Shown: piece by piece, positions 10,400 through 34,441 of the stretch | Position numbering within the stretch: the stretch's first letter is position 1 | Layout of the letters: each line of letters begins with the position of its first letter | NCBI GenBank assembly: GCA_904063045.1 | Contig: CAJFCJ010000001.1 | Coordinates: forward strand, 62,001-126,000 | Direction: 5' to 3' | Origin: Dimorphilus gyrociliatus | Lineage: Eukaryota > Animalia > Annelida | Length of the DNA stretch: 64,000 nucleotides | Notes under the pieces: model-generated | What the model was told of the DNA's origin: nothing | Seen by the model: the letters and a program-made list of their open reading frames with translations, nothing else | The model's database searches: none | Position numbers and translations under genes: made by a program

Positions 10400-11779
10400 A
10401 TGTCTGACGGTGGGAAAAAGGTAAAATTACGTTTACTTATTCTATTTGTTTAACCAAGTTGTAAAAATAATATTATACTTTTAATAGAATAATAAACCTA
10501 AAATGGAGAAAAGACGACGAGCAAGAATGAATGCCTCTCTAGGCGAATTAAAGGCTTTACTCTTGGATTCTATGAAAAGAGATGTAAGAACAGATAACTC
10601 TTAATTAAAATAAATTTTTTAAATTGTATACATTCCCCTGCTTTTCTCTTAATCTGTTAAGATATACAAATTGTACCATTTATATAAATAAATATGACAC
10701 ATGTTATCTTTTTATAGGGAACTAAGCATAATAAAATGGAAAAGGCTGATATCCTCGAGTATACAGTTCAATATTTAAGGAGAATTCAACGCCAAGAGTT
10801 TTCAGGTAAGCCACCTTCCTCCGTAAAATAATTATTAATCGTTAAACCACTGAACCCCCATTTAAATAGACAAGAGTAGTTGTAATAAAAAAAGAATAAG
10901 AAAGGGTGTGGTGTAATGGTAATGCGTGCAAATAAAAGGATGAGAGAATTGAAAAGGTTATGATTATGAGAAAAATAAATAGGATATTTAAATTTTCCTG
11001 TCCTTCCTTTCTTTCTTCTCTTTATTAAAGTTTTCATTCATCGGCCTTTTCTTCTATCCTTTTCGCATTTCTCTCACACCACCCCCCGGCCTCTCTATAG
11101 CACTTATCCCCTCATCATTTTCGTTTTATTAGTTCAATTAAGCGTTTAAGTTTTGCAAAGTTTTGATACGTTTTTTTTCACCGAGTGTTACATTAAGACG
11201 TTTCGTTTTTTACGATAGAATTAGGCCTTACTTTTCCCTTTTGAAAGGGCTAAAAGGGGTTGAGAAAGGGTAAAGGAGCTGGAAAAAAACCCAGATCTAC
11301 GTAGACAATAGTCGTAAAAGAACGGCGCCATGATAGGAAACTAGTTAGAGATAAGAGATTGTATATGAAATTGTAAACATTTTGTAAATTGATCTTTAAC
11401 AGTCGCTGCTGCTTCCGATCCATCAATTTTGAATAAATACTACGCCGGCTACAATGAATGTACGGAGGAAGTTTCAAAATTTTTATTATCAGCCGATATT
11501 GATTCGGATTTAAGAACCCGTTTAGTAGAACACTTAACGTCCTGTTCAACGATACGAAAAGCCGATCCCAACAACAATAACGTTCTACCAATGACTTTTG
11601 TCCTACCGGAAAGATCCAATTATTTAGTTATAACAAATTCAACACCAGAAAAGGCTATACTTATGCAACTTCCGTTGGAAAAAAAGAGATCTGGTTCTCC
11701 TTGCTCATCGGATTGCTCACCTCCAAAGTGCTCAAAATCTGAAGATCATTGGAGACCTTGGCAAAAGAACATTATGTGA
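10400..11779 (+). CDS. Hairy/Enhancer-of-split (HES) bHLH-Orange repressor
   Basis: Exons 10400-10420, 10488-10583, 10718-10805, 11403-11779. Basic region [14 protein letters not shown] with the HES proline, helix 2 [15 protein letters not shown], Orange domain [17 protein letters not shown]...LRTRLVEHL, and WRPW near the C-terminus. Confidence 0.92.
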
Positions 11780-14036: not shown

Positions 14037-17000
14037 ATGCTCCTTAAGTTATTCTGTTTACTTAACTTTGCTTCATTTGGGCAATGTTACGTTCATATTC
14101 CAGACTTTCCAACGGGAAAAGATTACGAATGGAGAGTGCGCGGGGATTTGAACATTATTATACTGTATCCGATTAGCTCTTTTTCATCGATTCCCTGCTC
14201 ACCACCCTTGAATCCAACACAAGTATTGGGTACAGAATTATTGACTAAAGTGTTAACAGATTTGAATTCAAATGAGAAAATTCTTCCCAATATATCACTT
14301 GGAGTTACTTATTACGATGATTGTGGAACGATTAATGGAGGATCAGCCAGAATTGTTCAAATTTATCAACAAGATTGTTTAGATGATTTTGAAAAGACTA
14401 ATAATATTATTGGAATTTTGGGTATATTTTCTTCAAATCAGGCATTATCTGTGGGAAGTTTATCTTCCCAATTAAAAATTCCAGTACTATCAACTTACGC
14501 TACAGCCGAAGGATTGTCAAATAAAGCTATATACGAGTATTTTACTCGGCTAGTCCCATCCGATAAATTTACCACCCAAGCAATGATGCACTTTTCGGAT
14601 TATCATAATTGGAGATATATTCAATTGGTGTTTACTGACGGCATTTTTGGAGAAAATGCTGCAAAAGGAATTCAAAAATTCGCAAAAATGAAGGGTATTT
14701 GCGTTGCAAATACTATGAGAGTCGATAGTTTCACTGATTTCAAAGCAACTGTAGACAAACTCATTAAGTATGAAAAAGCTAAAGTCATTGTAATGTTTAC
14801 ATATCCTGGCCACGGTAAAGAGATCATAAGATTATTAAACAAAACCAAATACTATGATCATTTTACATTTTTCGGCGCTGATTCCTATAGATTTTTGGAT
14901 GGATATGAAAAGATGCAATCTAAATCATTCTTATTCTTATACACACTTGGCGAAGATCCTAAATTTGTTGATCATGTATCATCATTAACTCCTTCAATGG
15001 CTGACCATATATGGATGAAAAAACTATGGGAACAATTGGGTGATTGTCATTTTGAAACAAATTGTTCTAAATACGCAAATTTTTACGAAACTAACAAAAT
15101 AACTGATAGTATCTTCAAATACATGTTCAAATTAGGAGATGGAATGGAAGCGTACGCCCGTGCATTGCATAATCTGATTTCAGATCAATGCCCTGAAGCA
15201 TTTAATAATAAAACACTACTAAAGGTAAAAAATATTTGAAATATAAAATATTTAATATCTGATTTATAATAAGAGAATTCAATAACATATTAATAGGATT
15301 GTACAAAGGGGCCAGATGTTTTAAAATATCTTCGGGAAGTGAAATTTAGGTCGAAAACTGGTATTAATTATTTCTTTGATGACAATGGTGACATGTTAGG
15401 CGACTATAATATATTCTACTACTCTCCAGTAGGAAATAAACTTGAACAAAAGTTAGCTGGAACGTGGTCAAAAAGAGGAGAGGTACTTTTGGCCTTAAAG
15501 CAGTTTCAAATTGAATCAATTTGCAGTAGACCGTGTCCCAAAAAGCATATTTATATTCCGCAAGATTTGGAGTGTTGTTGGCAATGCAAAAAATGCAGAG
15601 ATAATGAAATTGTTATAAAAAATAGAACCGAATGCAAGAAATGTCCTGAATTCTATTGGCCAGGTAAAAATACAAATTAAAACTATATATACTAATATAA
15701 GTCTCTAAAATTGTAGTTAGCGTATCGTATTTAAGATGAATTAGCCATACTGTCAATGATAGTTCTGTTCCTCTGACAAGTTTAATTCTTTTCATCAATG
15801 ATAGAATTTCCATAAATCTCGTTAATCGAACTGTTTTTTTCTAAATATTAGTACACTTTTAAGCAGAATGTTTCATTTACAGAAGAGAAAGACAAGATTC
15901 TTATTATAGAACTGTCGCTTTCTACTTGGTATTTTTCTATATTCGTGGTATTAATGAGTACAGTTTCTGATCGATACTGTACAGATATAATTTCATATTT
16001 GAATAATAATCATTTAATACAAGAAGGAGGTAACAAAATTCGCAATGATTTATAAATCAAGCACCAAATATAACTGTATATAAATAAGATATATTATAAG
16101 TGCATTTACAGTTAAAATACAACAAACTTTTATGTACAATATCCTTTTAATAGATATAGCACAAACATTTGTTGGATAATAATAACATATATTAATTATA
16201 TCTTTTACATAAGAATAAAAGAAAAGGACGTAGCAATTAAATAAGTTCTTCTTCTAATCTAGTCAAAAAAAGATATATACTAAATAATAAAGCAAATTTT
16301 CTTTTTGGTGTTTTCGTATTTCGTATATAACTTTGTCATTGTTTTTTCCACTTTAATCTAAGTATTTATTTAAATATCATGTAGAAGAAATAAAAAAATT
16401 TCTTTATTAATACAACTTCCGGTCTTTCTTCCTCTATTTTCATTCAATTTTTTTTAAATAAAGGAGAAATATACTCTCAACAATTTTTTAATGGTTTTAT
16501 GCCTTTTTTTATAATATTTTATTGGAAAAATTTCTTTTTATTATAACATTCATGTTTAAATATAGCTTTTTCTACCTTTAGACGCAGATGCTGCGAGTGT
16601 TTGCTTGGTAATAAAGAGTGAATATCCGAAATGGAGTGATACTTTGGTTGTTCTTTTACTGTTTATTGCGGTTGTTGGAGGCTCTTTAGCTAGTTTAATG
16701 GGCTTAGCATACAGGAAATATAGAAACAAGAAAATTATTAAAGCGTCCGCTCGCCATCTATCGGCTATAATACTTTTGGGGATCATTATATGTTTTACTA
16801 CAGTTATTTTTCTGTTGGCAAAGCCAAGGTTTTTGACCTGCTTATTCAGTCGTATCGGTTTAAATCTTGGAATAACATTCATTTATGTCCCTCTTCTTAT
16901 GAAGACTCAAAGAGTTTATAGAATTTTCAAAAGTGGATCAAAAGGAAAACAAAGACCAAGTTTCACTAGCAATAAATCTCTTATGATTATGACAGTTATT

Positions 17001-17489
17001 TTGATTGGATTTGAAGTTGTCTTGATTCTATTCAGCATACTTTTTTGGCAACCGACAGATAAACGAGTACAAAAAATTGAAATTGAGAAAAAAGTTGAAT
17101 TGACTTGCTACAGTCCTCCAATATCTTTGGCTATACCTCTCGGGTTCAATGTACTCATTCTATTATGTTGCGTGGGCTTGAGTTATCTAACTAGAAAATT
17201 ACCGGAGAACTTTAACGAATCCTGGTATATATTTGTGTCAGTTGCAACAACAATATTTCTATGGATAGTGCTATTGCCAGCATACTTTACTATGTTTTAT
17301 GTTTACTACAAAGTTATTATTCTTGGAATATGTCTCATAACTAATGGAATTCTTACTTTACTCTGCCTCTTCTTACCCAAAATTTATGCTATATTTTTTA
17401 TTGATGAGCAGGAAGTAGTCTATGCAAGCTATAGCCGCTACAACTCAACGAAAATTGCAACTGTATCAACTGGAGAAACAACTAGTTAA
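14037..17489 (+). CDS. Class C GPCR, mGluR-like (complete paralog 1)
   Basis: Exons 14037-15224, 15297-15663, 16582-17489 (phases 0,1), 820 aa. Signal peptide, Venus flytrap (RLVPSD, ENAAK), cysteine-rich domain (CSRPC...CCWQC..C...C..C) and 7TM (IIKAS, KTQRVYRIF, RKLPENFNES, PKIY). Confidence 0.92.
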
Positions 17490-18297
17490 GAAAAGAAAAC
17501 TTGTATATCGGCTGAAATTGAAGGAAAAATGATTTTTTCTCAAATGTTGCACATGTACAAAAAAACGTTCTATGTTATATTTAAAATTCGAAGCACAGAC
17601 AAACTTTTCCAAAGAGTAGCAATACTGGTTAAAAATCAAGTTAGATAGTATACACTCTGGTATAAAGTAAACTGTTAAATATATTCAAATAAACGAAAAA
17701 TTTGTAATATCAATATCAATATCAACGGCAGTTATTCTTATTAAAAAACTTGATGATTTTGCATTAAACTATATAGTGGACAAACTATAAATAGATTATT
17801 AATATTTTTCCTTTGGGTCCTAGTTATAAAGCACTTTTTTGAATGTGAGTAGAATGAAGGAGAAGCATGTATAAGTCTAGAATGATGCATTACACGATTA
17901 GGCTCTTTTTTAAAATTATTTAAATAACTATTCATGAAATACATAAAGAACGACAACTATTTGTTACCTTCGTACTAAACTTAAACTAGTTATTAACCAA
18001 CTACACTTTCATAAACAAGTTAATTAAGTTTTATTAATTAATTCCCTTTCTTTGGCCTATTTTGAAAAAAATTAGTATCCTATTCAATTGTTTGCGAACT
18101 ACCTTAAAGAAAGTTCATATGCTTCGAGAATAAGAAAAGACTGCTTTCAGTTAATAATAATTTATAAACAAAGAAGAAGGAAGTATATAGGCAGGTAATA
18201 ATTCTTCATCTTGCTATATAAATAAAATTTCGTCTTTAAAGACTTCGGGAAACATAAACACAGAAATAACTATTGAGAGATTGTAAGTTGACCAAAG

Positions 18298-20801
18298 ATG
18301 AGAAGACTAATATTTTTAATATTAGGACTGCCCTATGTTTTTTCCTTGTATAATCTAGCAAAATTCCCTGCTTCAAATAAGACAGATTTGAGAGGAGAAG
18401 GAGATTTAATTATTGCCCTTATGTATGAGACTCACATCGTTGGAAAAGTTCGCTGTGGTGGAAATTTAAACTACGATAGAGCAGTTACACCTGAGCTGAT
18501 GAGACTTCGAATTAAACACTATAATGATAACAATAATATTTTACCTAATATAACGTTAGGATACGTGTATTTAGATACATGCGGAGGGATTAACAGTTAT
18601 ACTTGGCGATCCATGGAACTCTTAAATGATCTAAATGGTGCAAGAACTACAAATGTTGTTGGAATTGTAGGACCATATTCTTCTGATCAATCAATATCTC
18701 TTGCTGGTATGACATCAGCATTAAATTTACCTACTTTGGGAATCTATTCAACGTCCGTTGAATTATCAAATAAGGGGAGATTTGAATATTTCTCGCGTCT
18801 TGTACCGTCCGATGCTTTCGCCACAGAAGCTATGGCTGAAGTTATGAAAACGCTTAAGTGGACGTATATTCAAATGTTATACATGGAAGGATCATTTGGT
18901 GAGAATGCCGCTAAAAATATCGAGAAAAATACAAAAAAATATGGGATATGCATTGGTAATAGCCAAAGATTTTCATTTGATTATTCCGATGATTATGATG
19001 AAATTGTCAAAAAAATAGTTAAGACTAAAAAAGCAAGAATCTTAGTTGCATTTCTCAGTCCCCAAATGAGAACATTATTGTTTAAAGCAATGGAGAGAAA
19101 TGCACCAAATGAAAGATTTATATTTGTAGCGGCTGATGCTTACGGTAGAGAACCTGGATATGAGCATCTGCAAGAGGGTAGTTTAATGTTTGTTTATAAT
19201 GGAGGTAAAGACGCTGTTTTTGAAGAATACTTCAATAATCTGAAACCTTCGGATCCTACTATATATTGGACAAGAAAAGTTTGGGAACATTATGGAAATT
19301 GTGATTTTGAAACCACTTGCCAAAAATACAATAAGATGTCCGATGTTAAACCAAATTTAAAATCTGCTCAAATTAAAGTTGCAGATGGTATAGATGCCTA
19401 TGCTTATGCTCTTCATGATTTGATAACGAATGAATGCCCTGACGCATTCAAAGATAAAAGTATTCTAAGCAATGGTTGTATAACTGGAGAAAGAGTTTTA
19501 AAATACCTGAGAAAGCAAAAATTCACTTCTCTAAGTGGTGTAAAGTACAGTTTTAATGACAGAGGTGACATGTTGGGTGATTATTTCATACAAAGATATA
19601 CTTGGAAGAATAAGCTATGGGAATACGATGTAGTTGGTAAATATTCTAAAGTCACAGAAGAGCTCAATATGTTTGAAAATCTGGAAATAGAGTCAATTTG
19701 TAGCAAACCATGTCCAAAGAAACATATTTATGTTCAACAAGATCTAAAGTGTTGCTGGCTTTGTAGAACTTGCCGGGAGAATGAGATCCTGGTTAACAAT
19801 AAAACAGAATGCCAGAAATGTCCAGAATTTCTATGGCCAGGTAAGAAAATGTCATTTTATGAGATAACTTATGAGTTTGACAATTAATGTGGTATAAAAT
19901 GATTTTAGACTCAGATGAAGCCTTGACCTGCCACGATATAGAAGATGAATACGTAAAATGGCAAGATCCGTTGGGTCTTCTTTTATTAATCCTGTCAATA
20001 ATAGGACTTATAGGCAATGTAGTTATTATTGTATTGTATACCATCTATAGGGAAGAAAAGATTATAAAGGCGTCGTCCCGACATTTCTCTGTAATGATCA
20101 TCTGCGGAAGTACAATAGGTTATATAAGTGTTTTATTGTTAGTTGCAAAACCAGAGCTGGCGACATGTCTACTAAATAGAATTGGGTTTCACCTTGGTGC
20201 AACATTCATTTATGCGCCCCTGTTCATGAAAACTCAACGAGTATATAGAATTTTTAGGGCTGGATCAAGGGGTAAACAAAGACCCAGTCTTACCAGCAAT
20301 CGATCTTTAATGATTACCACTCTTATTATAATTGGCATACAAGCTGCCTTGGTCGTTGTCAGTTTAGTATTGTGGCCTCCTGCCTCGGAAAGAATACAAA
20401 GGATAGAAATTGAGAAACGAGTCGAATTGACTTGTTATAGTCCTCCAATTTCGTTAGCTATACCTGTAGGATTCAATGTACTTCTTTTGCTATGTTGCGT
20501 CACATTAGGATATCTAACTAGAAAATTACCGGAGAATTTCAATGAATCTTGGTATATATTTGTGTCAGTTGCAACAACAATATTTCTATGGATAGTATTG
20601 TTGCCAACGTACTTTACGATGTTTTATGTTTATTACAAGGTTATAATTCTTGGAATATGCCTCATAACTAATGGAATTCTTACGTTACTATGCCTATTTT
20701 TGCCTAAAATATATGCGATCTTTTTCGTTGACGATGAAAACATTGAAAGTAGTAAAGGATCCAAAATTGCTCCAAGTTCGGTTAACGAAACGACTAGTTA
20801 G
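18298..20801 (+). CDS. Class C GPCR, mGluR-like (complete paralog 2)
   Basis: Exons 18298-19840 and 19909-20801 (one 68-nt phase-1 intron, CCAG|GTAAGA...TTTTAG), 811 aa. Same domain set as paralog 1. Confidence 0.92.
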
Positions 20802-21765: not shown

Positions 21766-22010
21766 GAGAAAGCTCTGACCTGCCAAGATATACAGGATGA
21801 ATACGTAAAATAGCAAGATACAGAGAGTCTTCTTTCTATAATCCTCTCTAAGTTGCCTTAACTGCAAAACAGACTAAGTGTATTTTTCAAGAAAGAAAAA
21901 ATTATTGAAGCATTATTCTTAAATCTTCCCTATGTTTTATTATAACGCTCCACGGAAGTACAAAGACTATGTAAGTGCTGTACTATTAGCGTCCCAATAT
22001 CGACTACATG
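21766..22010 (+). pseudogene. Decayed copy of the start of the paralog-2 7TM exon
   Basis: EKALTCQDIQDEYVK*QD versus paralog 2 DEALTCHDIEDEYVKWQD (TGG to TAG at 21811-21813). Degraded EKII and CGST-like stretches with indels follow. Confidence 0.75.
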
Positions 22011-23003
22011 GAAAGGAATTTTACCAGATATGATGTTCAGTATTGTCACGTCTGTAGGAATTGAAAAGTTTTAGAAGATGAGTATTCTGTTCTCCTAAAG
22101 CTTCTCATTCCAGATTCTTTGCCCAAGTCTGCACATAAAATTTATCTAAAATATTATACTTTTTGTAAATTCAAGTTAACTTCCACTGCATTTGTCTTAA
22201 CAGATTTAGTAATAATTGTATAGTCTTTTATATATTTTTCTACAACACCTTCTTTGAAAAACTTATACCATAAGGTTTTAACACACTCTTTCCATTGATT
22301 TGCAAACTTGTTGAATATAATATGTGTTAGATTGAAGTTCTCGATTTTCAATTAGCTAAAATTCTATATATAGAATGCATAATCAGATTAAAAGAATAAG
22401 AATCCTTTCATTGAGAATAGAAGTGATCTAAGAATTGAATAGTTGTTAATCAAACTGAACCCCATTCGAAACAGGTCTTTTTTCTACATTTTACATTTCA
22501 GTTTCCAACTTTTTTACTGTTGTAACTTTGGTAAGGTAATGAATAGATATTGAATATCACGTAAAAGATGACATTTTTTAGTTTTAGTGTTTTTAAGTAC
22601 TTCTTTTTATAGTTTTCGTTTTTTTGAAAAGCTAATAAGAGACAACGCCCAGTTTATCTTATAATACACTTTCAAAAATTCTAGTTTTCACTTTCCTAAT
22701 TGCCGATAGTGTGTGCTAAAGAAATCTAAGAATAACATACACTGACAAAAAGTCAGAAATATAATAATTCACTTAGTAGGTATAAAAAATCATTTTAGGC
22801 TGGAAGTTTGGGCCATACTATTCGAAATTTCCTCTGCTGTAGTTGAAAGAGAAGAACAATCGGATATAAGGCTTGTGATTTCTTTGGAGTAGCTAGTTAA
22901 TGCAAAATGAAGGTTCTTTTATATAAAAAATGACTTTTTAAGAGAATTAGTAATCTTAACATTATGTTAATAATATTACATCTTTCAGTCGTAATGAAGA
23001 TAA

Positions 23004-24300
23004 ATGAGTATGAGTATCAAGAGCAAGTGTATCCTTCGTCTTTTATTTCTTACTGGATGCATCTGTCTAATTCCAATACCAAAATTTCCATATTCAGAAC
23101 AAATGGAAATGTCTGAATATGGAGATCTAAATATTGGAATACTTATAAATGTACATGGATCCAGCGATAAAGGACTATGTTCAAAAACACCTTCGATTTG
23201 GTCTCTACTGGCTCCTCTTCAAATCCAATATACAATTGGAAAGATAAATGCCGATATAAAAATTTTACCTAACTTGACACTTGGCTTCAAAGTTGTTGAC
23301 ACTTGCGATCAATTAAATGGAGCGGTCTCGCGTCTTATTGAATTTCTTCCTCAAGCATGTCCTCAAATAAGGTGAGTGAACTTTCGCTAAATAACGTGAT
23401 TTATTACAACAAGTAGTGTAGTAACTTGCAATACCTATGAAAAACTTTTATTACCACAGAGAAGATGAGAACTATGTAGGTTTGCTTGGACCAGGTTCAT
23501 CTTCGTCAGCTGTTCCAGCTGCTGCTCTAGGATCTCAATACGAGTTGCCCTTGTTGTCAACTTATGCAACGTCTGAAGAATTGTCAAATAAGGTACGATT
23601 CAAATATTTCTCTCGTCTTGTTCCTCCTGATTCTGTTGTGGCGGAAGCAATATCGCAATTGTTAGAAGATTCTAAATGGTCTTTCATACAATTACTGTAT
23701 TCTGAAGGTTCGTATGGTGAAAATGCAGCTAAGAGTATTGAAAAAAATACGAAAGCAAAGGGTATTTGTATTGGTTTTAAGTATAGATTTAGTTCAGATA
23801 TGACAGATGACTACAGTTATATAGCCCGAAAAGTTCTTGAAAATAGAAAGGCCAAGGTAATAGTACTAATTGCATTTGGATCACATGTTCGAAAGTTTAT
23901 ATCCGCTTTAAGCAAAAGTAAACGGCCAGAAAGGTTTATCTTTATTGCATCGGATTCGTTTTCTCCAATTAGTGGATACGAAGATCAATTTCAAGGAAGC
24001 ATACAATTTTATTTTAAATATGGGCTGGATCCTGTATTTCATAACTATGTAAATTCTTTAAAACCATCTGATGCTAATCACTATTGGATAGAAAAACTAT
24101 GGGAATTAACTGGAAATTGCAACTTTACAACAACTTGTCAAAATATCTCAAAATTCTCGGAAGTGGGGAGTGCATTTTCATTAACAAATTACGTCATAAC
24201 CGCAAAATACGGAGATGGGTTAGAGGTTTATGCCAAAGCACTACATGATCTTGTTATCTCTAAATGTCCTCTGGCTTTTCAACATAAAAGCATATTGAAG
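23004..24300 (+). CDS. Class C GPCR Venus-flytrap cassette A (signal peptide plus VFT, no own CRD/7TM)
   Basis: Exons 23004-23371 and 23460-24300 (phase-2 intron), open frame throughout. Ends ...HKSILK|GTTATC at the phase-0 position where paralog 1 splices. Confidence 0.85.
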
Positions 24301-26129
24301 GTTATCGATCAATTTTAAATTTTATAAGTATATAGTATGACGCATGTATTAGTATATAAATTTTCTTAGTATAAGTAGCACGAGATAAACAAAAAAAGAG
24401 CTTTTAGAGAAGTAGTTAATCGCCATGAAAAAAAAGAAAGCTATGAATAATCATTTTTTTTAATTACATCTTGTATGATGTAAAAATTAAACGCAATAAC
24501 ATCTCTTTGTTGAACTTTCGCTTGAGTTTATTGAAGAAATAACAAAGCTGCATGACTACTGTGTATATATTTTCTGTGCTAACTTTAAAAGACATTCGAT
24601 ATTCATTAAATGGCTTAAAAAGGTTGAATCTAAAATTTCCTTTGTACATATGAGTACCCGGCCTTTGACAATCATATTCTTCATTCGCTTATTACTAATT
24701 AGAAAGTCTTGATTAAATTATGTTGGGAAAAAGAGTTAATTAATTGGTCAAATTAAGTATGTGTCTCATTATAAACATATGTAGTATATATTTAGTACAA
24801 TGAAAAAATAAAAATTTTCATATATTTTATAATATGTCATCTTCTAAGTTTATTCAGCAAAAGATAACTAATCCTTTTGAAATTAAATCGCTCTTAGGCA
24901 CTCTAGATGGCGTATAACAATAGCTTAGATAAATTGTATGTATGTACAGCATATATAGATACATTAGGTTCATACTTTTTTTCAAAGAGTAAGCGCTACT
25001 ATTGAAGAGGGCAGTCTATATATAGCTTCTATAAAGTTTTTAAAATAACCATTTAATGAATGAATAAATTAAAACGTTTAATTACTTACGATGAATAAAA
25101 TATAAACGTAATATAGAAAAAACAACTATACACACATATACATACACACGCAAACATAAACAAAAAATAGAAGATGTATATGCTAATGAGCTAAAGATAA
25201 TTGGTACTTATTGAGAGTTTACAAAATTTTTTGAAAGAGCCAAAAGTAGAAAGTTGTCATGTAAAATGTAATATTTCTATTGCTGATTTGGTGTGCCTTA
25301 GGCCTATGAGATACATATAATAGATATGAACTAACAAATCGCTTGCTGAGAGTGGAATGATAAATCATTTTCTGAGGGAAAAAAATTAATCAAGTAAGAA
25401 GGTAATCCAATAAGACACGTAATTTTTTCTATTCGATTGGTAAACTTCCTTTGCCGTACATTAGAGCGAGAAAGGAAAAGAGAAAGATAACAGACAAAGA
25501 GAAGATAAGAAATCTATTAAAGAGAACAAAATATCACAGAGATTGAATACATATGAAAGTACAAAGCAAGAAACGTTGATTTCTAATAGAAAAAGAAAAA
25601 ACGATTTATTTCCAAAGAAAATAAAGGACAAAGTACATTGCATATATATACTGTATGTGCGTATTTTTTTACCCACACCTCCCTTCTATCTTTAGATGTA
25701 TTCTCTTCGTGGTTCTCTTATTTATATTTAAAGGATATCGAGTCTTAGCTCTCAGTCATTTTCCTTTTAACTTATGTTATTTTACTGAGGTAATGATAAA
25801 TCTATACTATTAAGCGCTGCTCTAATAAATAAAAGAACTAAAAATTAAAATAAGTGCTAAATGGTAATTACAAATGGCAGTGCAAATACAAAACATCATT
25901 AGAAGAAATAAAAAAAGCTGATCTGTACATCTCGTTTGTTAAAAGGGAAACATGAAATGTCCAATTCAAAAACAGTTTCTTACACTAAATTTTCAAAGAT
26001 AAATAGTGAAAAATAAACACAAAAAACTTTATCAACTCCAAGCTATAAGTTCCAAAATTGTTGTTAATTTATGCTAAGCAATAGCACTACATATACTGAC
26101 TCTCATCGTTCATTAGATAGTTGTAAGCA

Positions 26130-28047
26130 ATGCACCAACTAACATACCTATTGTTAGTTATTATTAACTTCCATCATACTGGCTCTGAAATCGTGATACC
26201 AGATTTTCCGAATGGACCAGAATTTGAATGGCGAGAAGAAGGAGATCTCAATATTGGTATTATCACTTCAGCTCACTCAACAACTTCAAGAGGGCCATGT
26301 ACAGGTATGATAAGTACTTCCAGCGTATTAATCGGAAAGAGAACACAGTATATTTTAAATAAAATTAATAATGATCCATATTTCTTGCCAAATATTACTC
26401 TGGGGTTTATATTCCTCGACGCGTGTGGTACAACAAACGGTCCCGTTTCCAGAGTTGTTCAATTACTTCCATTGTCTTGTTCAGTGCCAAGGTAAAAAAT
26501 ATTTCACAATGAGCGAATTATTTAATTATAAACAATTGTAAAATGTTTCGTTTATTTTTTTTGAAAAGAATACCTAAAAAGTAAAAAAAGCAACAAATAA
26601 TCAAAGTGAATACCTTTTGATATATTTTGATATCCTTTAAACAACGGTTTATAAGTACATCAATTCTATAAATATGCAATATATATATATTAGTATGTGT
26701 GCATGTACGAACGAATGTGTTTATAACTACAGTATATACATATGCACAAGTATATATTACAGTTACTTACATCTATATATTCCTATATAAATGTATGTAT
26801 CATATTTCGGACATGCATACTAAACTGTATGTAAACACTATTGAGTAAGGAAAGTTATACTATTGTATAGATTAAGTAGTCTTTTTCTGTGCATACAATA
26901 CCTTAGAAGTTAGAGTAGGTACACTTAATAAGCAGAGTAAATCCATAAACTGTATGAGTTTTATTTTAAATGAAAGGGATCACGTAGATAGAAGCAAAAC
27001 AAACTTTGTGTTGTTCTTCCTAAAATAATTTTCGTGTAAATTAGATGCGAAAGAAATTGCTACCACCTTTTAAACGATTTAGATAAAAAAAACAAAAAGA
27101 AGAATATTCCTTTCATCTTCAAATAAGGAAAGAAACGTACATTTTAATGAAAATGAGAGTTGTCAGTTCTTGAATATTTTTTACCTATCACTTTAAGTAA
27201 AAATTCTTTTATCGTCGGTCTTGTTGGACCTGGATCTAGTTCACAAGCCGTCCCAGCTGCGGGTATGGTATCTCAGTTTAAGCTACCGTTGCTATCAACT
27301 TTTGCAACTTCTGAAGAACTTTCCGATAAGTCACGATTTCAATATTTTTCACGACTGGTTCCTCCCGACTCTATTGCAACTGAAGCCATGACGCAGCTTA
27401 TGATAGAGTTTGAGTGGAGCTATATTCAGTTACTATACGCTGAAGGATCATATGGAGAAAATGCTGCTAAAGGGGTAGAGAAGAATGCGAAGAAAAGAGG
27501 TATATGTATAGGATATAGCTATAGGCTTAATGCTGACGATTCAAACGACTATGAAGCCATTGCTAAAAAGCTTATTGAGCACAAGAAAGCTAGAGTTATA
27601 GCTATGATAGCAGGCAGTTACTATATGAGAAACATTCTTACAGCTATAGAAAAAATATCTAAAGGTGAGCAGTTTATATTTATGGTCGTCGACTCATTCG
27701 GCAGAATATCGAACTATGAACATCGCCAAAATGGAACTTTACAAATAATCTATGATGGTGGCATTGATCATGATTTTGCCAATTACATGTACTCTCTTAA
27801 ACCTCAACAAGCTAAACATCATTGGGAGAAACAATTGTGGGAAAAATTAGGGAGATGTAATTATACACTTGACGCTACTGATCCAACTTCTTGTTTAAAA
27901 CATTCAAATTTTTCTAATACAACGCTCTACCCATATTCTAGTTCGGCAGTGAAATATTCAGATGGTGTAGAAGTATACGCAAAAGCAATTAAGGATTTAA
28001 TAGAATCCTCCTGTCCTGACGCCTTCAACAATAAATCACTTTTAAAG
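26130..28047 (+). CDS. Class C GPCR Venus-flytrap cassette B (signal peptide plus VFT, no own CRD/7TM)
   Basis: Exons 26130-26491 and 27198-28047 (phase-2 intron at the same position as in A), open frame. Ends ...NKSLLK|GTTATC, phase 0. Confidence 0.85.
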
Positions 28048-29486
28048 GTTATCGATCAGTTTTTTTAACAAACAATAACTAACAAAATTTTCTCCTTACT
28101 TAAGAAAAAGTCATTATTTTACTTTTTTAATATCCTTAGAACATTAAAGGTAATTGTGCACCTATATTTGAGTACTGTGGTGTTACACTTACGTGATGGT
28201 CTTTTGGCTAAAAGTTAAGGCCTACTCTTTGACGTTATTATAGCAATATATTGGAGCTTTTTTTCTTTATACTCTGTTAACTATTTCCTTTCCTGCTTGA
28301 TGCAAATTAAAAAAGATAAAAGAGAAAAAATAGATCGCTGTGTCACTTTTTTTCTAAAGAGTACAAACTAAAAAAAGAAATGATAAAAGTCAGATGAATA
28401 TGAAAAATTGGCTTATCAAAGGATATTTTATTTACTAAAATTGTAAAGTAAAAGAATCTTTAAATGAAATTATAAATTTAACTTTCCGTTTAAAAATGAA
28501 TTAAAGGAGATTTTTCTTTCTTGATGTTAATACTTAAGCGCATTACGTAAAATTCTTTAATTTTCTTTTTTGGTACTAAAATAACAACAGGCTATAATTA
28601 CTACTAATACTATGACTAAGACTAACATTATCTCTTTTAATTATTAGGATTTAATTATCACTAAGTCGATCTTAAATCACTCATTTTAATTGAATTTTAA
28701 TATTATAAATACACAAATTATGTAAGATATGAGTTAATGGAAAATCATAAAGGGATATTAAAAATCTGTGGCCTAATTCATAGAAATCTCTTATTTTATA
28801 CATTTGATATATAAAATATATGTTTAAATTATGTATATCACATTCGATAGATGGCGCAACAGTTTTTACAATATCACTGAAATAACATTTCCATTACAGC
28901 TAGTGATGAAAAGACCGCAAAAATGGCGTTTTCTACTAATTAAATTCCTAATAAAACTGTTTGTAGTATAGATACTCTTAGTCTTATTCTTTCTACTTTT
29001 CCTGGCCATTAGTTGGGTTGGAACAGAGGGAAAGAATTTATATAGAAAATCTGACGTTTTCCGAAGACGAGTACCAATGCCTTTTACTTTTTAATAATAG
29101 ATATAAAACTGAGCAAAATGTTGATAACACGTACTTACGGCTTAATATTTAACTGAGGAAGGCATTATATATACAGTGTATATACTAATACGTATATATA
29201 CAGTATATATATACAGTATATAAATATTAGTATATCTGCTGTATATGCTGTATACAATGAAAATAACAAATGAAGCCTCTTTTCGTAATAATGAAATTAA
29301 GATGAAATTTTGAAATAGATACGTGATTGTACGTTTTCTAAGTTAGGATATTTTATAATGTGTGACATCTTATTAAGATATCAACTGCTATAAAAAGTAC
29401 TTTTGCATCCTGTCATGTGATACACTATTCATTTGAAATCGCTATTTACTATAATGAAATGCACAACCTTTATATAAAATAAATTT

Positions 29487-30749
29487 ATGTGCATGCGCGA
29501 TCATTTATTTGTCATTAGCAGCAAGAAAATTTTGCAACTAATGTCTCATAAAGAGATGATAGTGATTTTCCTAGCAAATTTCATCATTTTTGTCAAGAGT
29601 TATCCACTTATCCCAGGTTTTGTTGGGAATGAGTGGGAAGTAGACGGAGAAGTGAAAATCGGAGTACTTTATTCAGTTCATTCCGATCATTCTTCAGGAA
29701 ATGAAGCATTATCTTGTCAAGGTAAAGTAAGTCCTTCCGGTGTTCTTGCGGCCGAACTAGCAGAGTTAAGAATAAAGAATATCAATAAGGATCCAAATTT
29801 CTTGCCAAATGTCACATTGGGATTACTTTACCTCGATACTTGTGGAGGAGTCAACGGAGCCGTAGCCAGATTAAATCATTTTATGTCGGATAAATGTCCA
29901 ACTAGAACAACCGAAAAAAAAGTTGTGGGAATAGTAGGACCATTTTCTTCTGCTCAATCTATTCCGGCAGCAGCTTTAGCATCTCAATTTAAAATTCCTC
30001 TTCTGGCTACATTTGCAACATCGGATGAATTATCAGATAAAGCTCGCTTTGAATATTTTTCTCGTCTTGCACCACCAGATTCGTTCATAACTCAAGCAAT
30101 GGTAAGCGTTATGGTTCGTTTCAAGTGGAGTTACATTCAACTTCTCTACTCGGAAGGCTCTTACGGAGAAATTGCTGCCAAGAGCATTGAGAAAATCGCC
30201 AGAGCAAATGGTATTTGTATCGGAAATTCTGTTCGATTAAGTTCTGATTATTCTGAAAATTATATAACAATTGCCGAGAAGATTTTGGAGAATAGAAATG
30301 CGAAAGTAGTCGTCCTTATAATGTCTCATAAATTTAGAGAAGATCTCTTTACAGCATTATATCAAGTTGGAAGCAAAAAAAGTGATTTTATCTTTTTTTC
30401 TGCCGACTCATACAGGCGATTTCCAGGATTTGAACAAATTCAACATGGAACTTTGCATTTCTTTTATAAAGTTGGTAGAGATACAAGCTTTGAAGATTTA
30501 ATAAAAACTAAACAACGATCAGAATCTGATCATGCATGGATAAAATCTTTGTGGGAAGAAGCAGGCAAATGTAATTTCTCTACCACTTGTTCGAAGTATA
30601 AGTCATTGGGAGATATTAATAGTCTTACTAGCAGAGACTTCAAATTTTCTCTCAAGGTTGGAGATGGTGTCGAGGTATACGCAAGAGCTTTGCATAGTCT
30701 CATCTCGGAGAACTGCCCCGAAGCCTTTCTGAACAAGAGTCTATCAAAG
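29487..30749 (+). CDS. Class C GPCR Venus-flytrap cassette C
   Basis: Single open exon ending ...NKSLSK|GTTGTT, phase 0. The start may be ATG 29541, which gives a better signal peptide. Confidence 0.85.
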
Positions 30750-31327
30750 GTTGTTAATCATATTTTTTGGACAAGTTTCGATCTGGTTTAATTTGTTAAA
30801 AGCTATTTAGCAGAGTTCAAAAAAGGAAAACAAAAAGTAAACCAGAATCAAGAGGGGGATTTAATCAGCAAATGCTATTTTACTTAAAAGAGTGAAATTT
30901 CTTAAATATCATAAGACAGTCGTATAAAACCTAAGGAATTCAATGTTTTTGTTTTTTTGTATTTTAAGAGTGGCAGCTTAATCGAAAACTGGTGCATTTG
31001 CCTATTTAGTTTATATTTAAATTATTAAAAAGATCAAAGAAATGGCTATCAGCAGAGGTGAAAAGGAAAAATTTTCTTTATTTAGTATCAAGGGCTCTTA
31101 AATAGATTGTATTTATAATCGCATAAGAAAAATTTGTACTCTTAATGTTACAATATCATTTATTAAATGATATTTAAAGATAATTGGTGCAAATTCTCCT
31201 ATGCGCAAGGTAATATCCGTCTATTTCAGTATCGAATTGTATGAGTCTTGTATTCTTATAATTCTTTATGGAAATTTATAAGATGTAGATTGTTTTTCTA
31301 AAATGTAAGTATATAGAAGTATGCTCT

Positions 31328-31349
31328 AAATTGATCGATTACCTTTAAA
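31328..31349 (+). promoter_or_regulatory. Putative RNA docking site immediately upstream of the shared acceptor
   Basis: AAATTGATCGATTACCTTTAAA is reverse-complementary to the exon/intron junctions of cassettes A (24295-24315), B (28041-28062) and more weakly C (30746-30760). Confidence 0.7.
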
Positions 31350-31352
31350 TAG

Positions 31353-33235
31353 GACTGTGTAACTGGAGAATCGGTATTAAAGTATCTTAGACAGCAAGAG
31401 TTTAAAGCTACATCCGGCGTTCAATATAAATTCGATGTTAAAGGCGATATGCTTGGAGAATATACAATATTTCAATATACTTGGGAAAATGCAACTTGGA
31501 ATCAAAGAATTGTTGGTGAATGGAAAAAAGATGGTGAAATTTTACAAATGGATAAGAATCTTAGTTACATAGAGTCAATTTGTAGTAAACCATGCCCACC
31601 AAAACATATATATCTACAACAAGAGTTGGCTTGTTGTTGGTTATGTAAGAAATGTAGAGAAAACGAAATCTTATCCGAAAACAAGACTGAATGCGAAACT
31701 TGCCCCAAATTTTTTTGGCCAGGGATGTCACCAATGAATTTTCTATAAATATGAAATTTCATCAATTATCAGTATATGAAACTTAAAGAAATTTAAGAAA
31801 GGACAAAAATATCTTTTGTCAAGAGTAAATGTAGAGTTGGAAAGTAAAAACTGGAAAGTAAAAATATCTAAAATTTCAGCTTGAGTACTCTTTTCATTAC
31901 TTGTCTTCTTCGGTCAATGACATTATTAGTATATTAACATGTTTTATATACTTCCTCTCAAAATATTAGATATGTTTAAAAGTGAGAAAGATTCAGGACG
32001 TCTCTTTAAATCCCTTTTTAATTATCTAATTATTTACTTTGACAAAATTTAATATAATTGCATTATTCTGGTTTAAAAATATCAATATTATGAAAAGTTT
32101 TAAGAGGGTCTTTAATTTTAAAAAATACCTTTTTTCAGAAGGGTAAAAATTCTTCTAAAACTATGAAGGTTAAGAAAGTTTAATGGTATTAATTATAATG
32201 TATATCTTTTAAAAGATTCAGAGTACTGTCATTATTCTCTTCAAACAGATAATTAATATTTAAAAACAAACTACAAACTATTAATAAGATAAGATGTAAG
32301 TCTTTCAACAAACATTTATAAGTGACATCCCTCTGCCAGATTCTGAAACTGCTACAAGATGCTTGGCAATTGAAGTTGAATATGTTAAATGGAAAGATCC
32401 TTTGGCTATATTATTATTACTTCTTGCATGCTTCGGATTTATTCTTAATATCATCATAATAGCCATCTATAAATTATATAGTCACGAGAAAATAATTAAG
32501 GCCTCGTCTAGACACCTATCAGCTACTATCTTAGTTGGCAGTACTCTTGGCTATATTACTGTATTACTTTTTATCAGTAAACCATCTTTTACAATCTGCC
32601 TAATTAATCGGATTGGATTTCACATGACAGTATGCATTATTTATGCACCTCTGCTACTGAAAACACAAAGGGTATACAGAATTTTCAAGGCTGGATCAAA
32701 GGGTAAACAGCGACCAAAATTTGTAAGCAATCAAGCTCAATTATCGGCTACTTTATGCATTGTTTTAATCGAATTAATTCTCGTCATTGTAAGTTTGATA
32801 TTGTGGAAACCCGGATCGGAAAGAATTCAAAGAGTAGAAATCGAAAAACAAGTTGAACTGACTTGTACCAATCCTTTACCGGCGTTAATTTTACCTTTGT
32901 CGTTTAATATCCTTTTGCTGTTACTATGCGGTATTTATGGTTATTTGTCAAGAAAATTACCCGAAAATTTTAACGAATCCTGGTATATCTTTGTTTCCGT
33001 GGCAACGACCATATTTCTGTGGATAGTCTTTTTACCCACATATTTTACCATGTTTTATGTGTATTATAAAGTTATCATTTTGGCAATATGCTTAATTATC
33101 AACGCAACTTTAACCCTACTTTGTTTGTTTATACCCAAGATTTACGCCCTATTCTTTATCTCTGAAGAAGATTTAGTATTCGGAACGATGACTAAAAGCG
33201 AAGTAACCAAAGTTGGACCATCAAGTATAAGCTAA
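31353..33235 (+). CDS. Shared (constant) end-of-VFT, cysteine-rich and 7TM exons of the cassette GPCR
   Basis: Exon 31353-31722 (DCVTGESVLKYLRQQ...GDMLGEY...CSKPC...CCWLC...FWP) and exon 32340-33235 (DSETATRC...KWKDP...RKLPENFNES...PKIY). The donor at the homologous position reads GGATGT rather than GT. Confidence 0.85.
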
Positions 33236-34441
33236 GAAAAGCCCTGATAAAATCCTTTCCTGAACAGCACCTAATTTTAAAATTAGGCACCAAAATTCAG
33301 CTCACACTGGTTTTCACAACTGTATATTTAAAGCTATAAAAATCTAGATTGACAAGGAAGGTTTGATAATATAAATAAATATATGCTCATACCTAGACAC
33401 ACAGCTGCACAAACTCTAATCAATGTAAGACAATATATATATATAAATATATATTTCTATAATTCCAATAGGAGTATATATGTTGTATCTACAGTATCTC
33501 TGTATCAGATATTGGCACCTAGTATGCACTGGGTAACAAAAATATGATTACAATTGTTGTAAATTCCTGGTCAAGAAAACCGGAATTGAAATTGTATGAT
33601 TGTTGATATAAAATAAAAGTATATATTCCAGATATTGTTCATTTCAACTTTTTTTCCACTTATTATCGCATATTACGACCATCTATTATTAGTATTCACT
33701 TGTAACTATCTCTCCCTGTCATTATACATATACTGAATACAGTAAATCTATATATATACTGTATATATGTATTTCATAAACGATTAGCTTAGGCTATTAT
33801 AATAAAAGATGACTTACCGAGTTATCTTTAACTGTTTCTTGTTATTATATTCGGAATATTAAATAAGCATTTTCAAAATAGAAATTTTATATATAGAAAT
33901 GTAATGAGGCTTAAAAACTAATGAATGAATGTCTGCGTTACTATGTCACTACTTTATTATAACACATCACAGAAAAGTTTTAAGATGATAGGATAGTGAA
34001 CAGAAGAAAGATTAAATGAAACTTCTTACATTTACATGATTTTAACTAAAATATCATTGTTTTCTTACGCCTTTTTGTTTTTGGAAAGCAGGGGTAACGA
34101 TAATGATATTGGCTTTTGAAAAACTTGTTATGGACTCTTTTTTACCTTTTAGAAAATAGCTAGGGATAGAAAGTACTATCAATTATGAACAACAGAACAA
34201 ACGCTCTTCCCTATTCTCTTTTTCTTATGAAGTATGGTAACTTATAGAATTAAGAACATTGGAAAGCTATAAGGGAATTTAGGTTTAGAAAAGGTATTCG
34301 ATATGTAAAACGTTTCCATCAAGAAGTGTATTATAACTCATAAAAGGAGAAAAGACTTGTATTTTAATGAAAAATATATGCAAGATGCCTATCATTTTAT
34401 GCTAATATATCTCTCTCTCAATACTTCCGCATAATTGATTT

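What the first reader, a model, noticed from the sequence alone, without database searches (positions are those of the whole stretch)
24295..31349. Docking-site/selector RNA pairing links each cassette donor to the common acceptor
Seen: 31328-31349 (AAAUUGAUCGAUUACCUUUAAA), ending just before the shared AG at 31351-31352, is reverse-complementary to the splice junction of A (24295-24315: 20 of 21 positions paired, one G-U), B (28041-28062: 21 of 22, one G-U) and C (30746-30760: 13 of 15, two G-U). All three leave a U-U mismatch at donor +3. The homologous ordinary intron of paralog 1 shows no such end-to-end complementarity. Established: competing docking/selector duplexes control exon choice in Dscam1 exon 6, insect 14-3-3 and sDscam. 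Inference: one docking site pairs with one selector at a time and loops out the intervening cassettes (about 7.0, 3.3 or 0.6 kb). Unusually, the duplex covers the 5' splice site and pyrimidine tract themselves. Caveats: about 9 pairs are close to a generic anti-5'-splice-site sequence and the ATCGAT core is self-complementary.
Basis: partly seen in the sequence, partly recalled or inferred. Interest (0 to 1): 0.95.

Follow-up and report, generated by a model that had tools for sequence, protein, structure and literature searches.

The report
Conserved splice-site bridging duplex, annelid receptor
In the tiny annelid Dimorphilus gyrociliatus, three alternative ligand-binding heads of one class C GPCR each end in a short sequence complementary to a single element just before the shared body exon. 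Both elements are frozen in a distant relative, which points to RNA pairing that helps join one head to the body across unusually long introns, but no transcript data could be obtained.

Summary
Docking element 31328-31349 pairs with the exon/intron junction of head A (20 of 21 positions) and head B (21 of 22). These are the two best of all 2993 GU sites in the window, at -23.9 and -24.7 kcal/mol. Random GU x AG pairs reach that in 0.03% of cases. Head C (13 of 15, -13.0, rank 172) is not significant on its own here.

The "cassettes" are whole 403-404 aa alternative 5' modules, each with its own start codon and signal peptide. Each is a truncated Venus-flytrap domain that only the shared exon completes.

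A related species carries the same A-B-C-constant cluster. Four-fold sites between the two species are saturated (30-39% identical). Yet the docking element is 20/20 identical, the selectors are retained (C intact there), and the U-U mismatch at donor +3 is kept. Four single-head paralogs have ordinary 65-81 nt introns at the same site with no complementarity.

Best reading: an sDscam-beta/14-3-3-xi-type docking/selector system, unusual in covering both splice sites. The annotation calls the heads separate genes. The scan had already noted this same stretch (s1-080260, s1-084470).

The parts
23004..23371 (+). Head A exon 1: start codon, signal peptide and the start of the Venus-flytrap domain. 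Its donor is the ordinary AAG|GTGAGT at 23372.
   Evidence: ORF and context. The exon is phase 2. Exon 1 plus exon 2 gives 403 codons.
23460..24300 (+). Head A exon 2 (ANF_receptor). It ends in the terminal donor UUGAAG|GUUAUC.
   Evidence: It is 100% identical to DgyrCDS18 of Dimorphilus gyrociliatus. The orthologue on L009 is 72% identical at the nucleotide level.
24295..24315 (+). Selector A. It spans exon -6 to intron +15 and overlaps the 5' splice site.
   Evidence: 20 of 21 positions pair with 31328-31348. Duplex energy is -23.9 kcal/mol, rank 2 of 2993. The interspecies alignment stops at 24316.
26130..26491 (+). Head B exon 1: start codon, signal-like N-terminus and an ordinary donor AAG|GTAAAA.
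   Evidence: Exon 1 plus exon 2 gives 404 codons.
27198..28047 (+). Head B exon 2 (ANF_receptor). It ends in the terminal donor UUAAAG|GUUAUC.
   Evidence: The orthologue is at L002 872-1654.
28041..28062 (+). Selector B. It spans exon -7 to intron +15.
   Evidence: 21 of 22 positions pair. Duplex energy is -24.7 kcal/mol, rank 1 of 2993. The first 18 intron bases are identical in the relative.
29541..30749 (+). Head C: a single exon of 403 codons with its own start codon.
   Evidence: The Pfam ANF_receptor match stops at profile position 300 of 353. The orthologue is 66% identical at the protein level.
30746..30760 (+). Selector C, degenerate in this genome (GUUGUUAAUCA instead of GUUAUCGAUCA).
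   Evidence: 13 of 15 positions pair. Duplex energy is -13.0 kcal/mol, rank 172 of 2993, null P = 0.07. The orthologous selector in the relative is intact at -21.7 kcal/mol.
31328..31349 (+). Docking element. It ends 1 nt before the acceptor AG and contains the probable branch point (UUGAU) and the weak pyrimidine tract.
   Evidence: It is the reverse complement of selectors A and B. 20 of 20 bases are identical in the relative while the rest of the intron cannot be aligned.
31351..31352 (+). The shared acceptor AG.
   Evidence: The constant exon starts at 31353, in phase with all three donors (and frame arithmetic).
31353..31726 (+). Constant exon 1. It encodes the last ~70 residues of the Venus-flytrap fold and the nine-cysteine domain. 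The 3' end is uncertain (31722 or 31726).
   Evidence: Pfam NCD3G at residues 74-123. 87% protein identity to the relative. The donor problem is described.
32323..33232 (+). Constant 7TM exon (7tm_3). The start is 32323 or 32340.
   Evidence: Pfam 7tm_3, E = 6e-57. 90% protein identity to the relative.

Best explanation
The locus is one class C GPCR gene of Dimorphilus gyrociliatus. It has three alternative 5' modules (A, B, C), each encoding most of a ligand-binding Venus-flytrap domain, and one set of constant exons.

Each module ends in a very weak donor (GUUAUC or GUUGUU, with U at +3). That donor lies inside a conserved selector. A single conserved docking element lies directly before the constant acceptor.

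In the pre-mRNA the docking element pairs with one selector at a time. This turns a 0.6-7 kb intron into a hairpin-closed one, in an animal whose splicing is tuned to ~66-nt introns, and hands that module's donor to the common acceptor. Which selectors are present depends first on which module's promoter fired.

Because the duplex covers both splice sites, I infer a two-part helix hinged at the conserved U-U at +3. Helix 2 (+4 to +15, -12.6 kcal/mol) stays as the tether. Helix 1 (exon -7 to +2, about -7 kcal/mol) opens for U1, U2AF and U2.

Shown: the complementarity, its rarity, the conservation of both arms, its restriction to the multi-head gene, and the dependence of the heads on the constant exon.
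Inferred: that the duplex forms in vivo, that it promotes rather than blocks splicing, the hinge, and promoter use.
For: 1. The complementarity is real and rare.

2. The orthologous cluster in a relative (L001, L002, L009) keeps the docking element 20/20. It also keeps selectors A, B and C and the U-U at +3. Four-fold sites between the species are only 30-39% identical. Ordinary intron ends of the same locus are 6-9 of 15 identical. The blastn alignments end exactly at the selector ends and begin exactly at the docking start.

3. Codons GTT ATC GAT after the donor show no synonymous change in five of six selectors, so the constraint is on nucleotides and not on a read-through peptide.

4. Four single-head paralogs have 65-81 nt introns at the same phase-0 site, with donor-acceptor duplexes of only -2.8 to -4.5 kcal/mol.

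5. The heads alone stop at ANF_receptor profile position 300 of 353. The contiguous paralog 2 reaches 351, so the constant exon is needed to complete the fold. All three donors are in phase.

6. The terminal donors pair poorly with a canonical U1 5' end (-4.1 kcal/mol). Internal donors of the same heads give -6.8 to -11.5.

7. The genome paper reports a median intron of 66 bp, with splicing more efficient on short introns (PMC7854359).

8. The same topology was validated by compensatory mutagenesis in mite sDscam-beta (PMC9258826).

9. In both species the nearest head has the weakest duplex.
Against: - Only one weak RNA run exists.
- The public annotation calls A, B exon 2 and C as separate head-only products.
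- No compensatory substitution. Both arms are invariant in the core, and only two species are available.
- The duplex would occlude the 5' splice site, the branch point and the pyrimidine tract. In known cases such occlusion masks sites rather than activating them (PMC2724269).
- C's selector is statistically unremarkable in this genome.
- About 9 of the pairs are generic anti-5'-splice-site sequence. Paralog 1's donor already gives -9.6 kcal/mol with the docking element.
- With all three selectors present in an A-initiated transcript, pairing alone does not explain how A wins.
Confidence: 0.58

Rival explanations
1. The duplex forms but is a mask or gate rather than an activator. By sequestering a head's 5' splice site together with the branch point and pyrimidine tract of the common acceptor, it delays or blocks joining. 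Possible purposes are to hold the acceptor until the whole cluster is transcribed, to balance head usage, or to divert transcripts to head-only products.
For: The helix covers -7 to +15 of the donor and -25 to -4 of the acceptor. Long-range stems that cover splice sites suppressed those sites in Drosophila minigenes (PMC2724269). The annotation contains head-only models that read through the donor to a nearby stop.
Against: A single docking copy can mask only one donor, yet it masks the only acceptor. That gives no selectivity. Head-only products would be truncated Venus-flytrap folds. The elements occur only where introns are long, which fits a distance-bridging role. The read-through stops are not conserved: B in the relative runs on for 40 more codons.
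Confidence: 0.17
2. The two elements are conserved for reasons other than pairing with each other. They could be a 20-bp asymmetric protein-binding site used in opposite orientations on DNA, giving enhancer/promoter-type looping as with convergent CTCF sites in protocadherin clusters. Or they could be unusual splice signals bound by a dedicated RNA-binding protein through the shared AUCGAU core.
For: There is no covariation and both arms are invariant, as expected for protein sites. The conserved T/T at +3 is a fixed difference between the orientations rather than a pair. The core ATCGAT is a palindrome. CTCF-type regulation exists in this genome (PMC7854359).
Against: The elements sit exactly on the exon/intron and intron/exon junctions and extend into coding sequence, which a DNA site has no reason to do. 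The motif does not resemble CTCF. The flanks are complementary, not palindromic, so on RNA the two arms differ outside AUCGAU. Of the five non-shared departures from perfect complementarity among the D. gyrociliatus selectors, four are transitions that keep a G-U wobble. The motif occurs nowhere else in the window.
Confidence: 0.13
3. It is a relic. A, B and C are independent or decaying head-only genes left by partial tandem duplications. The complementarity is inherited from one ancestral intron whose ends happened to pair, and it has no present function.
For: The annotation treats the heads as separate genes. C's selector has decayed here. The ancestral GT of the constant exon's own donor is GG in this genome. 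The duplication model of Ivanov and Pervouchine explains how multiple selectors arise (PMC6071210).
Against: Neutral sequence is saturated between the two species, so a relic could not stay 20/20 identical. All heads and constant exons keep open frames with 64-90% protein identity despite saturated silent sites, which indicates purifying selection. The heads are incomplete folds without the constant exon.
Confidence: 0.07
4. The pairing acts in trans. Each head is its own short transcript, and the selector/docking duplex brings it to a separately made constant pre-mRNA for trans-splicing.
For: The same kind of pairing drives trans-splicing between sDscam-beta clusters (PMC9258826). A helix that includes the last exon bases would tether a free 5' exon.
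Against: No spliced-leader trans-splicing was found in this species (PMC7854359). All parts lie in cis, in order, on one strand. No polyadenylation or terminator evidence was sought or found.
Confidence: 0.05

Closest known systems
sDscam-beta 5' variable cassettes of chelicerates (Tetranychus urticae; Hou et al. 2022, PMC9258826)
   Same: Tandem multi-exon 5' cassettes chosen with alternative promoters and joined to one constant region. One docking site sits in the intron before the constant exon. One selector follows each cassette's last donor. The pairing shortens a long, variable intron.
   Different: The gene family differs (Ig adhesion molecule versus class C GPCR), and so does the phylum. 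There are 3 heads instead of dozens. The sDscam selectors lie 43 +/- 10 nt inside the intron. Here the helix runs across the 5' splice site itself and up to 3 nt from the acceptor AG. sDscam has mutational proof and this locus has none.
14-3-3-xi exon 5 and Dscam1 exon 4/6/9 competing RNA structures in insects
   Same: One docking site with several mutually exclusive selectors, conserved intronic islands, and looping-out of unused units. 14-3-3-xi has the same downstream-docking topology.
   Different: Those are internal mutually exclusive exons of about 100-300 nt, and their pairs are purely intronic. Dscam exon 6 also needs a repressor (hrp36) that the pairing relieves. Here the units are whole 403-aa 5' modules with their own start codons.
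Protocadherin alpha/gamma and UGT1A variable-first-exon clusters
   Same: The variable 5' units encode the ligand- or partner-binding part. Each has its own start and is joined to shared constant exons.
   Different: Choice there is made on DNA (promoter/enhancer looping through CTCF) and no RNA docking system is known. Those variable units are single exons without internal introns.
Intron-end bridging structures: yeast RP51B UB1/DB1, Drosophila conserved intronic boxes (PMC2724269), teleost (GT)n/(AC)n intron ends
   Same: Complementary sequences near the two ends of a long intron bring donor and acceptor together and help weak sites.
   Different: Those have one donor and one acceptor with no competition, and the paired boxes lie beside the splice sites rather than on them.
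Duplication model for competing structures (Ivanov and Pervouchine 2018, PMC6071210)
   Same: Tandem duplication of an exon together with one arm of an intronic stem yields several selectors for one docking site. That fits heads A, B and C, which all carry the 5' arm.
   Different: The model needs an ancestral stem. The four single-head paralogs examined show none, so the stem either arose in the ancestor of this gene or was lost from the paralogs.

Membership tests
Docking-site/selector competing RNA pairing (Dscam1, 14-3-3-xi, sDscam-beta type) | One docking sequence is complementary to several selectors, so that only one pairing can form at a time. | tested here: met
   A pairs at 20 of 21 positions, B at 21 of 22 and C at 13 of 15, all with the same 22 nt. 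In the relative, all three pair at -21.7 to -32.2 kcal/mol. C is weak in this genome.
Docking-site/selector competing RNA pairing (Dscam1, 14-3-3-xi, sDscam-beta type) | Each selector is attached to one variable unit, and the docking site is next to the constant exon. | tested here: met
   The selectors lie at the terminal donors of A, B and C. The docking element ends 1 nt before the common acceptor AG.
Docking-site/selector competing RNA pairing (Dscam1, 14-3-3-xi, sDscam-beta type) | Both elements are conserved islands in otherwise diverged introns of orthologues. | tested here: met
   The docking element is 20/20 identical and the selectors match for 11 to 18 leading bases. Four-fold sites are 30-39% identical and ordinary intron ends are 6-9 of 15 identical. 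Only two species were available.
Docking-site/selector competing RNA pairing (Dscam1, 14-3-3-xi, sDscam-beta type) | Compensatory (covarying) substitutions keep the pairing. | tested here: inconclusive
   The core is invariant, so no double change exists. Single changes are mostly G-U compatible. The helix is longer in the relative through A-run/T-run flanks, which is weak evidence. No third species was found.
Docking-site/selector competing RNA pairing (Dscam1, 14-3-3-xi, sDscam-beta type) | The variable units are spliced mutually exclusively to the constant exon (transcript evidence). | not testable with these tools
Only one weak RNA run was listed. Indirect support comes from in-phase donors and from heads that are truncated folds without the constant exon.
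Docking-site/selector competing RNA pairing (Dscam1, 14-3-3-xi, sDscam-beta type) | Disruptive mutations change exon choice and compensatory mutations restore it. | not testable with these tools
   This needs minigenes or genome editing.
Docking-site/selector competing RNA pairing (Dscam1, 14-3-3-xi, sDscam-beta type) | The paired elements are intronic and leave the splice sites free (43 +/- 10 nt from the donor in sDscam-beta). | tested here: not met
   The helix spans exon -7 to intron +15 and acceptor -25 to -4. This is the main departure, so I file the locus as a variant.
Variable-first-unit / constant-exon gene cluster (protocadherin, UGT1A, sDscam) | Tandem variable 5' units, each with its own start codon and signal peptide, share one set of constant exons. 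| tested here: met
   A, B and C are 403, 404 and 403 codons and each starts with Met plus a hydrophobic N-terminus. One NCD3G exon and one 7tm_3 exon follow. The order is the same in the relative.
Variable-first-unit / constant-exon gene cluster (protocadherin, UGT1A, sDscam) | Each variable unit has its own promoter. | not tested
   No shared upstream motif of 9 nt or more was found. No CAGE or ATAC data were accessible here.

The most novel reading that the evidence does not exclude
The docking element is a built-in guide that replaces part of the snRNA work. Its core UUACCU is identical to positions 5-10 of the canonical U1 5' end. It pairs across the exon/intron junction of donors that U1 can barely recognise (conserved U at +3, 4 bp with U1). 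It also holds the last 6-7 exon bases next to the 3' splice site, much as EBS-IBS pairing does in group II introns. On this reading, cis RNA pairing rather than U1 would define these 5' splice sites and let one acceptor serve whole alternative ligand-binding domains of a GPCR.
Probability: 0.1. Interest if true: 0.88.

Novelty: new variant of a known kind. Interest (0 to 1): 0.64.

Why it matters
If confirmed, this extends docking/selector control beyond the arthropod, amphioxus and human cases listed in PMC9258826. It would be a case in an annelid and in a receptor family where the swapped part is the whole ligand-binding domain. One 7TM signalling body could then be fitted with three different sensors.

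It would also be a natural case in which the long-range helix lies on the splice sites themselves. That makes an open question directly testable: how a spliceosome tuned to ~66-nt introns handles rare kilobase introns, and whether a duplex can hand a weak donor over to the spliceosome rather than simply hide it.

The locus is small (10 kb) and the helix is short, so the compensatory-mutation test is simple. The public annotation splits the gene into head-only pieces and would need correcting.

Tried and rejected

2. Annotated full-length protein. The search of protein representatives with the constant exon found no hit above 57% identity, only paralogs, so it gave no junction information.

3. 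Third species. A protein-pattern scan of metagenome contigs found nothing. The exact 20-mer docking scan gave three chance hits in unrelated prokaryote-like contigs. More distant homologues (L007, L008, L020) have other gene structures and are not comparable.

4. Introner or transposon terminal inverted repeats. Rejected. The intron position is ancestral, being shared with four paralogs. The repeat also extends into conserved coding sequence.

5. A read-through peptide (VIDQF) as the reason for selector conservation. Rejected as sufficient. There are no synonymous changes in GTT ATC GAT. The stops are not conserved. It also cannot explain the docking element.

6. Rfam scan of 22000-34000. Only sub-threshold miRNA-like hits on low-complexity sequence.

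7. Shared promoter motif upstream of A, B and C. None of 9 nt or more.

8. Other ATCGATCA copies in the window (7 found against 1.9 expected). Their flanks are unrelated.

9. V(D)J-like DNA joining at inverted signals. Considered and set aside, because the GT/AG sites are in phase at an ancestral intron position.

Full report
**What is in the sequence**

In register, the docking element 31328-31349 pairs as follows:

| Head | Selector | Watson-Crick | G-U | Mismatches |
|---|---|---|---|---|
| A | 24295-24315 | 19 | 1 | U-U at donor +3 |
| B | 28041-28062 | 20 | 1 | U-U at donor +3 |
| C | 30746-30760 | 11 | 2 | 2, including U-U at +3 |

The acceptor AG is at 31351-31352 and the constant exon starts at 31353. 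The three introns are 7052, 3305 and 603 nt. All three donors are phase 0 with the constant exon.

**Is it more than chance?**

- Counting pairs with G-U allowed, A and B are the only 22-mers in the 64 kb with 20 or more pairs to the docking element. The next best has 18. A shuffled docking sequence reaches 20 somewhere in the window in 1.2% of shuffles, about 2e-7 per position.
- By RNAduplex energy, B (-24.7) and A (-23.9 kcal/mol) rank first and second among all 2993 GU sites.
- Of 18000 random GU x AG pairs from this window, 0.03% reach -23.9 (mean -7.8, sd 3.3).
- Cofolding 91-nt fragments gains -22.8 (A) and -25.8 (B) kcal/mol. With a shuffled core the gains are -7.6 and -8.7 (sd about 1.6).
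- C is different: -13.0 kcal/mol, rank 172 of 2993, null P = 0.07. Taken alone it would not be a finding.
- A and B are duplicates, so statistically this is one ancestral match that has been kept twice.

**What the "cassettes" are**

The window comes from Dimorphilus gyrociliatus. Head A exon 2 is 100% identical to DgyrCDS18 on the window's own 3.6-Mb contig.

The locus lies in a tandem family of class C GPCR genes:

- Paralog 1 (13950-17486) has an ordinary 72-nt intron at the homologous place.
- Paralog 2 (18292-20798) has no intron there.

A, B and C are not small internal exons. Each is a complete alternative 5' module with its own start codon and hydrophobic N-terminus:

| Head | Exons | Codons |
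|---|---|---|
| A | 23004-23371 and 23460-24300 | 403 |
| B | 26130-26491 and 27198-28047 | 404 |
| C | 29541-30749 | 403 |

These are followed by one nine-cysteine exon and one 7TM exon.

Pfam places the end of head C at ANF_receptor profile position 300 of 353. The contiguous paralog 2 reaches position 351. The first ~70 residues of the constant exon supply the missing part. A head alone is therefore an incomplete fold, which argues that the heads must be joined to the constant exon.

The internal donors of A and B are ordinary (GTGAGT, GTAAAA). The terminal donors are GTTATC, GTTATC and GTTGTT. They give only 4 bp (-4.1 kcal/mol) with a canonical U1 5' end, against -6.8 to -11.5 for the ordinary donors. 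The U1 sequence is taken from general knowledge and was not verified for this species.

**Comparative evidence**

Logan assemblies of an unnamed relative carry the same cluster in the same order: A on L009, and B-C-constant on L002 and L001. The samples are SRR23372215, SRR23372216, SRR23372228, SRR23372229, SRR23372231 and SRR31984834.

- Protein identity is 64-68% for the heads and 87-90% for the constant exons.
- Four-fold degenerate sites are only 30-39% identical, which is saturation.
- Against that background the docking element is identical over 20 of 20 bases, while the rest of the intron cannot be aligned.
- The blastn alignments start exactly at 31328 and stop exactly at the selector ends, 24316 and 30761.
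- The first 11 (A) and 18 (B) intron bases are identical.
- The relative's head C carries the intact GGTTATCGATCA.
- Ordinary intron ends of the same locus are 6-9 of 15 identical.
- The U-U at +3 is present in all six selector/docking combinations.

Duplex energies in kcal/mol:

| Head | Relative | D. gyrociliatus |
|---|---|---|
| A | -29.5 | -23.9 |
| B | -32.2 | -24.7 |
| C | -21.7 | -13.0 |

In both species the nearest head has the weakest helix.

Four single-head paralogs have 65-81 nt introns at the same phase-0 site, with donor/acceptor duplexes of only -2.8 to -4.5 kcal/mol. They are paralog 1 here and L012, L021 and L005 in the relative. The elements are thus specific to the multi-head gene with long introns.

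**What the comparison does not give**

There is no compensatory substitution, because the core of both arms is invariant. The single changes are mostly transitions that keep a G-U wobble. The longer helix in the relative rests on an A-run facing T-runs. Both are weak evidence.

Only two species are available. A protein-pattern scan and an exact 20-mer scan of metagenome contigs found no third species.

**Rival reasons for the conservation**

- *A read-through peptide (VIDQF...).* This exists on paper, and the public annotation indeed models A, B exon 2 and C as separate head-only products. But GTT ATC GAT shows no synonymous change in five of six selectors. The downstream stops are not conserved. 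And a peptide cannot explain the docking element.
- *A DNA-level protein site used in two orientations.* This cannot be excluded by sequence alone. It does not explain why both elements sit exactly on the splice junctions and reach into coding sequence.
- *A transposon origin.* This is excluded, because the intron position is ancestral.

**Mechanism**

The topology is that of 14-3-3-xi and, most closely, of mite sDscam-beta. There, multi-exon 5' cassettes with alternative promoters are joined to a constant region. The join uses a docking site before the constant exon and selectors 43 +/- 10 nt after each cassette's donor, and it was proved by disruptive and compensatory mutations (PMC9258826).

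D. gyrociliatus has a median intron of 66 bp and splices short introns more efficiently (PMC7854359). A device that closes a 0.6-7 kb intron therefore makes sense.

The unusual point is that the helix lies on the 5' splice site, and also on the probable branch point (UUGAU, A at 31334) and the pyrimidine tract. Such occlusion usually masks sites (PMC2724269).

I therefore propose, as inference only, a hinged helix:

- The conserved U-U at +3 separates helix 1 (exon -7 to +2, about -7 kcal/mol) from helix 2 (+4 to +15, -12.6 kcal/mol).
- Helix 2 can remain as a tether while helix 1 opens for U1, U2AF and U2.

Pure masking, a trans-acting version and a relic are listed as rivals.

Because each head has its own start codon, promoter use probably decides which selectors exist in a given transcript. 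How an A-initiated transcript avoids using B or C is not explained by pairing alone.

**Verdict**

Two complementary elements are under strong selection at exactly the sites that must be joined.
- This is best read as a new variant of the docking/selector mechanism, in a new phylum and gene family.
- It lacks covariation and any transcript or mutational evidence.
- The scan had already noted the same stretch (s1-080260, s1-084470). Two further docking-type notes on other pieces of this genome (s1-080332, s1-080650) were not checked.

Noticed in passing
window 28146-28198 (orthologue L002 ~1795-1850): About 100 nt after head B's donor lies a ~75-nt intronic island that is nearly identical in the relative. 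It folds into a hairpin with one compensatory pair (G-C to U-A) and three G-U-compatible changes. Its 5' arm holds a consensus-like donor (AAAG|GTAATT at 28149/28150). Its 3' arm holds a U1-like ACTTAC. In D. gyrociliatus the 5' arm also pairs with the 3' half of the docking element (-20.8 kcal/mol, about rank 5). There is no Rfam match. It could be a decoy donor, a balancer structure or a small RNA.
   Followed up: partly
window 31719-31728 and 32323-32340: At the ancestral donor of the constant nine-cysteine exon, the relative and paralog 1 have CCAG|GT but D. gyrociliatus reads CCAG|GG. A GT four bases downstream (31727), combined with an AG 17 bases upstream of the ancestral 7TM acceptor (exon start 32323), keeps the frame and adds 7 codons. 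It is either a shifted intron or an assembly or variant issue.
   Followed up: partly
window 23103-24318, 27265-28068, 29541-30791 (L016): The public assembly GCA_904063045.1 carries heads A (DgyrCDS18, 375 aa, starting at an internal Met), B exon 2 (267 aa) and C (411 aa) as separate head-only products that read through the terminal donors. The gene model is probably split wrongly.
   Followed up: partly
window 18292-20798: Paralog 2 has the Venus-flytrap and cysteine-rich parts in one 531-codon open frame, with no intron at the site where every other family member has one. This suggests intron loss or a processed copy.
   Followed up: no
window 29166-29229: This is a low-complexity stretch between heads B and C. 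It gives sub-threshold mir-466/297/1277-like Rfam hits, has a weak match in the relative, and is the place where the read laying filter tripped.
   Followed up: no
window 1066-1755, 11393-11776, 63723-63998, 59691-61712: Neighbouring genes, read from open frames only. They look like a nuclear-receptor ligand-binding domain, two hairy/E(spl)-like bHLH-Orange genes (one ending in WRPW) and an ionotropic glutamate receptor-like gene.
   Followed up: no
whole window: ATCGATCA occurs 7 times against 1.9 expected (0 of 100 shuffles reach 7). The four copies outside the locus have unrelated flanks.
   Followed up: yes
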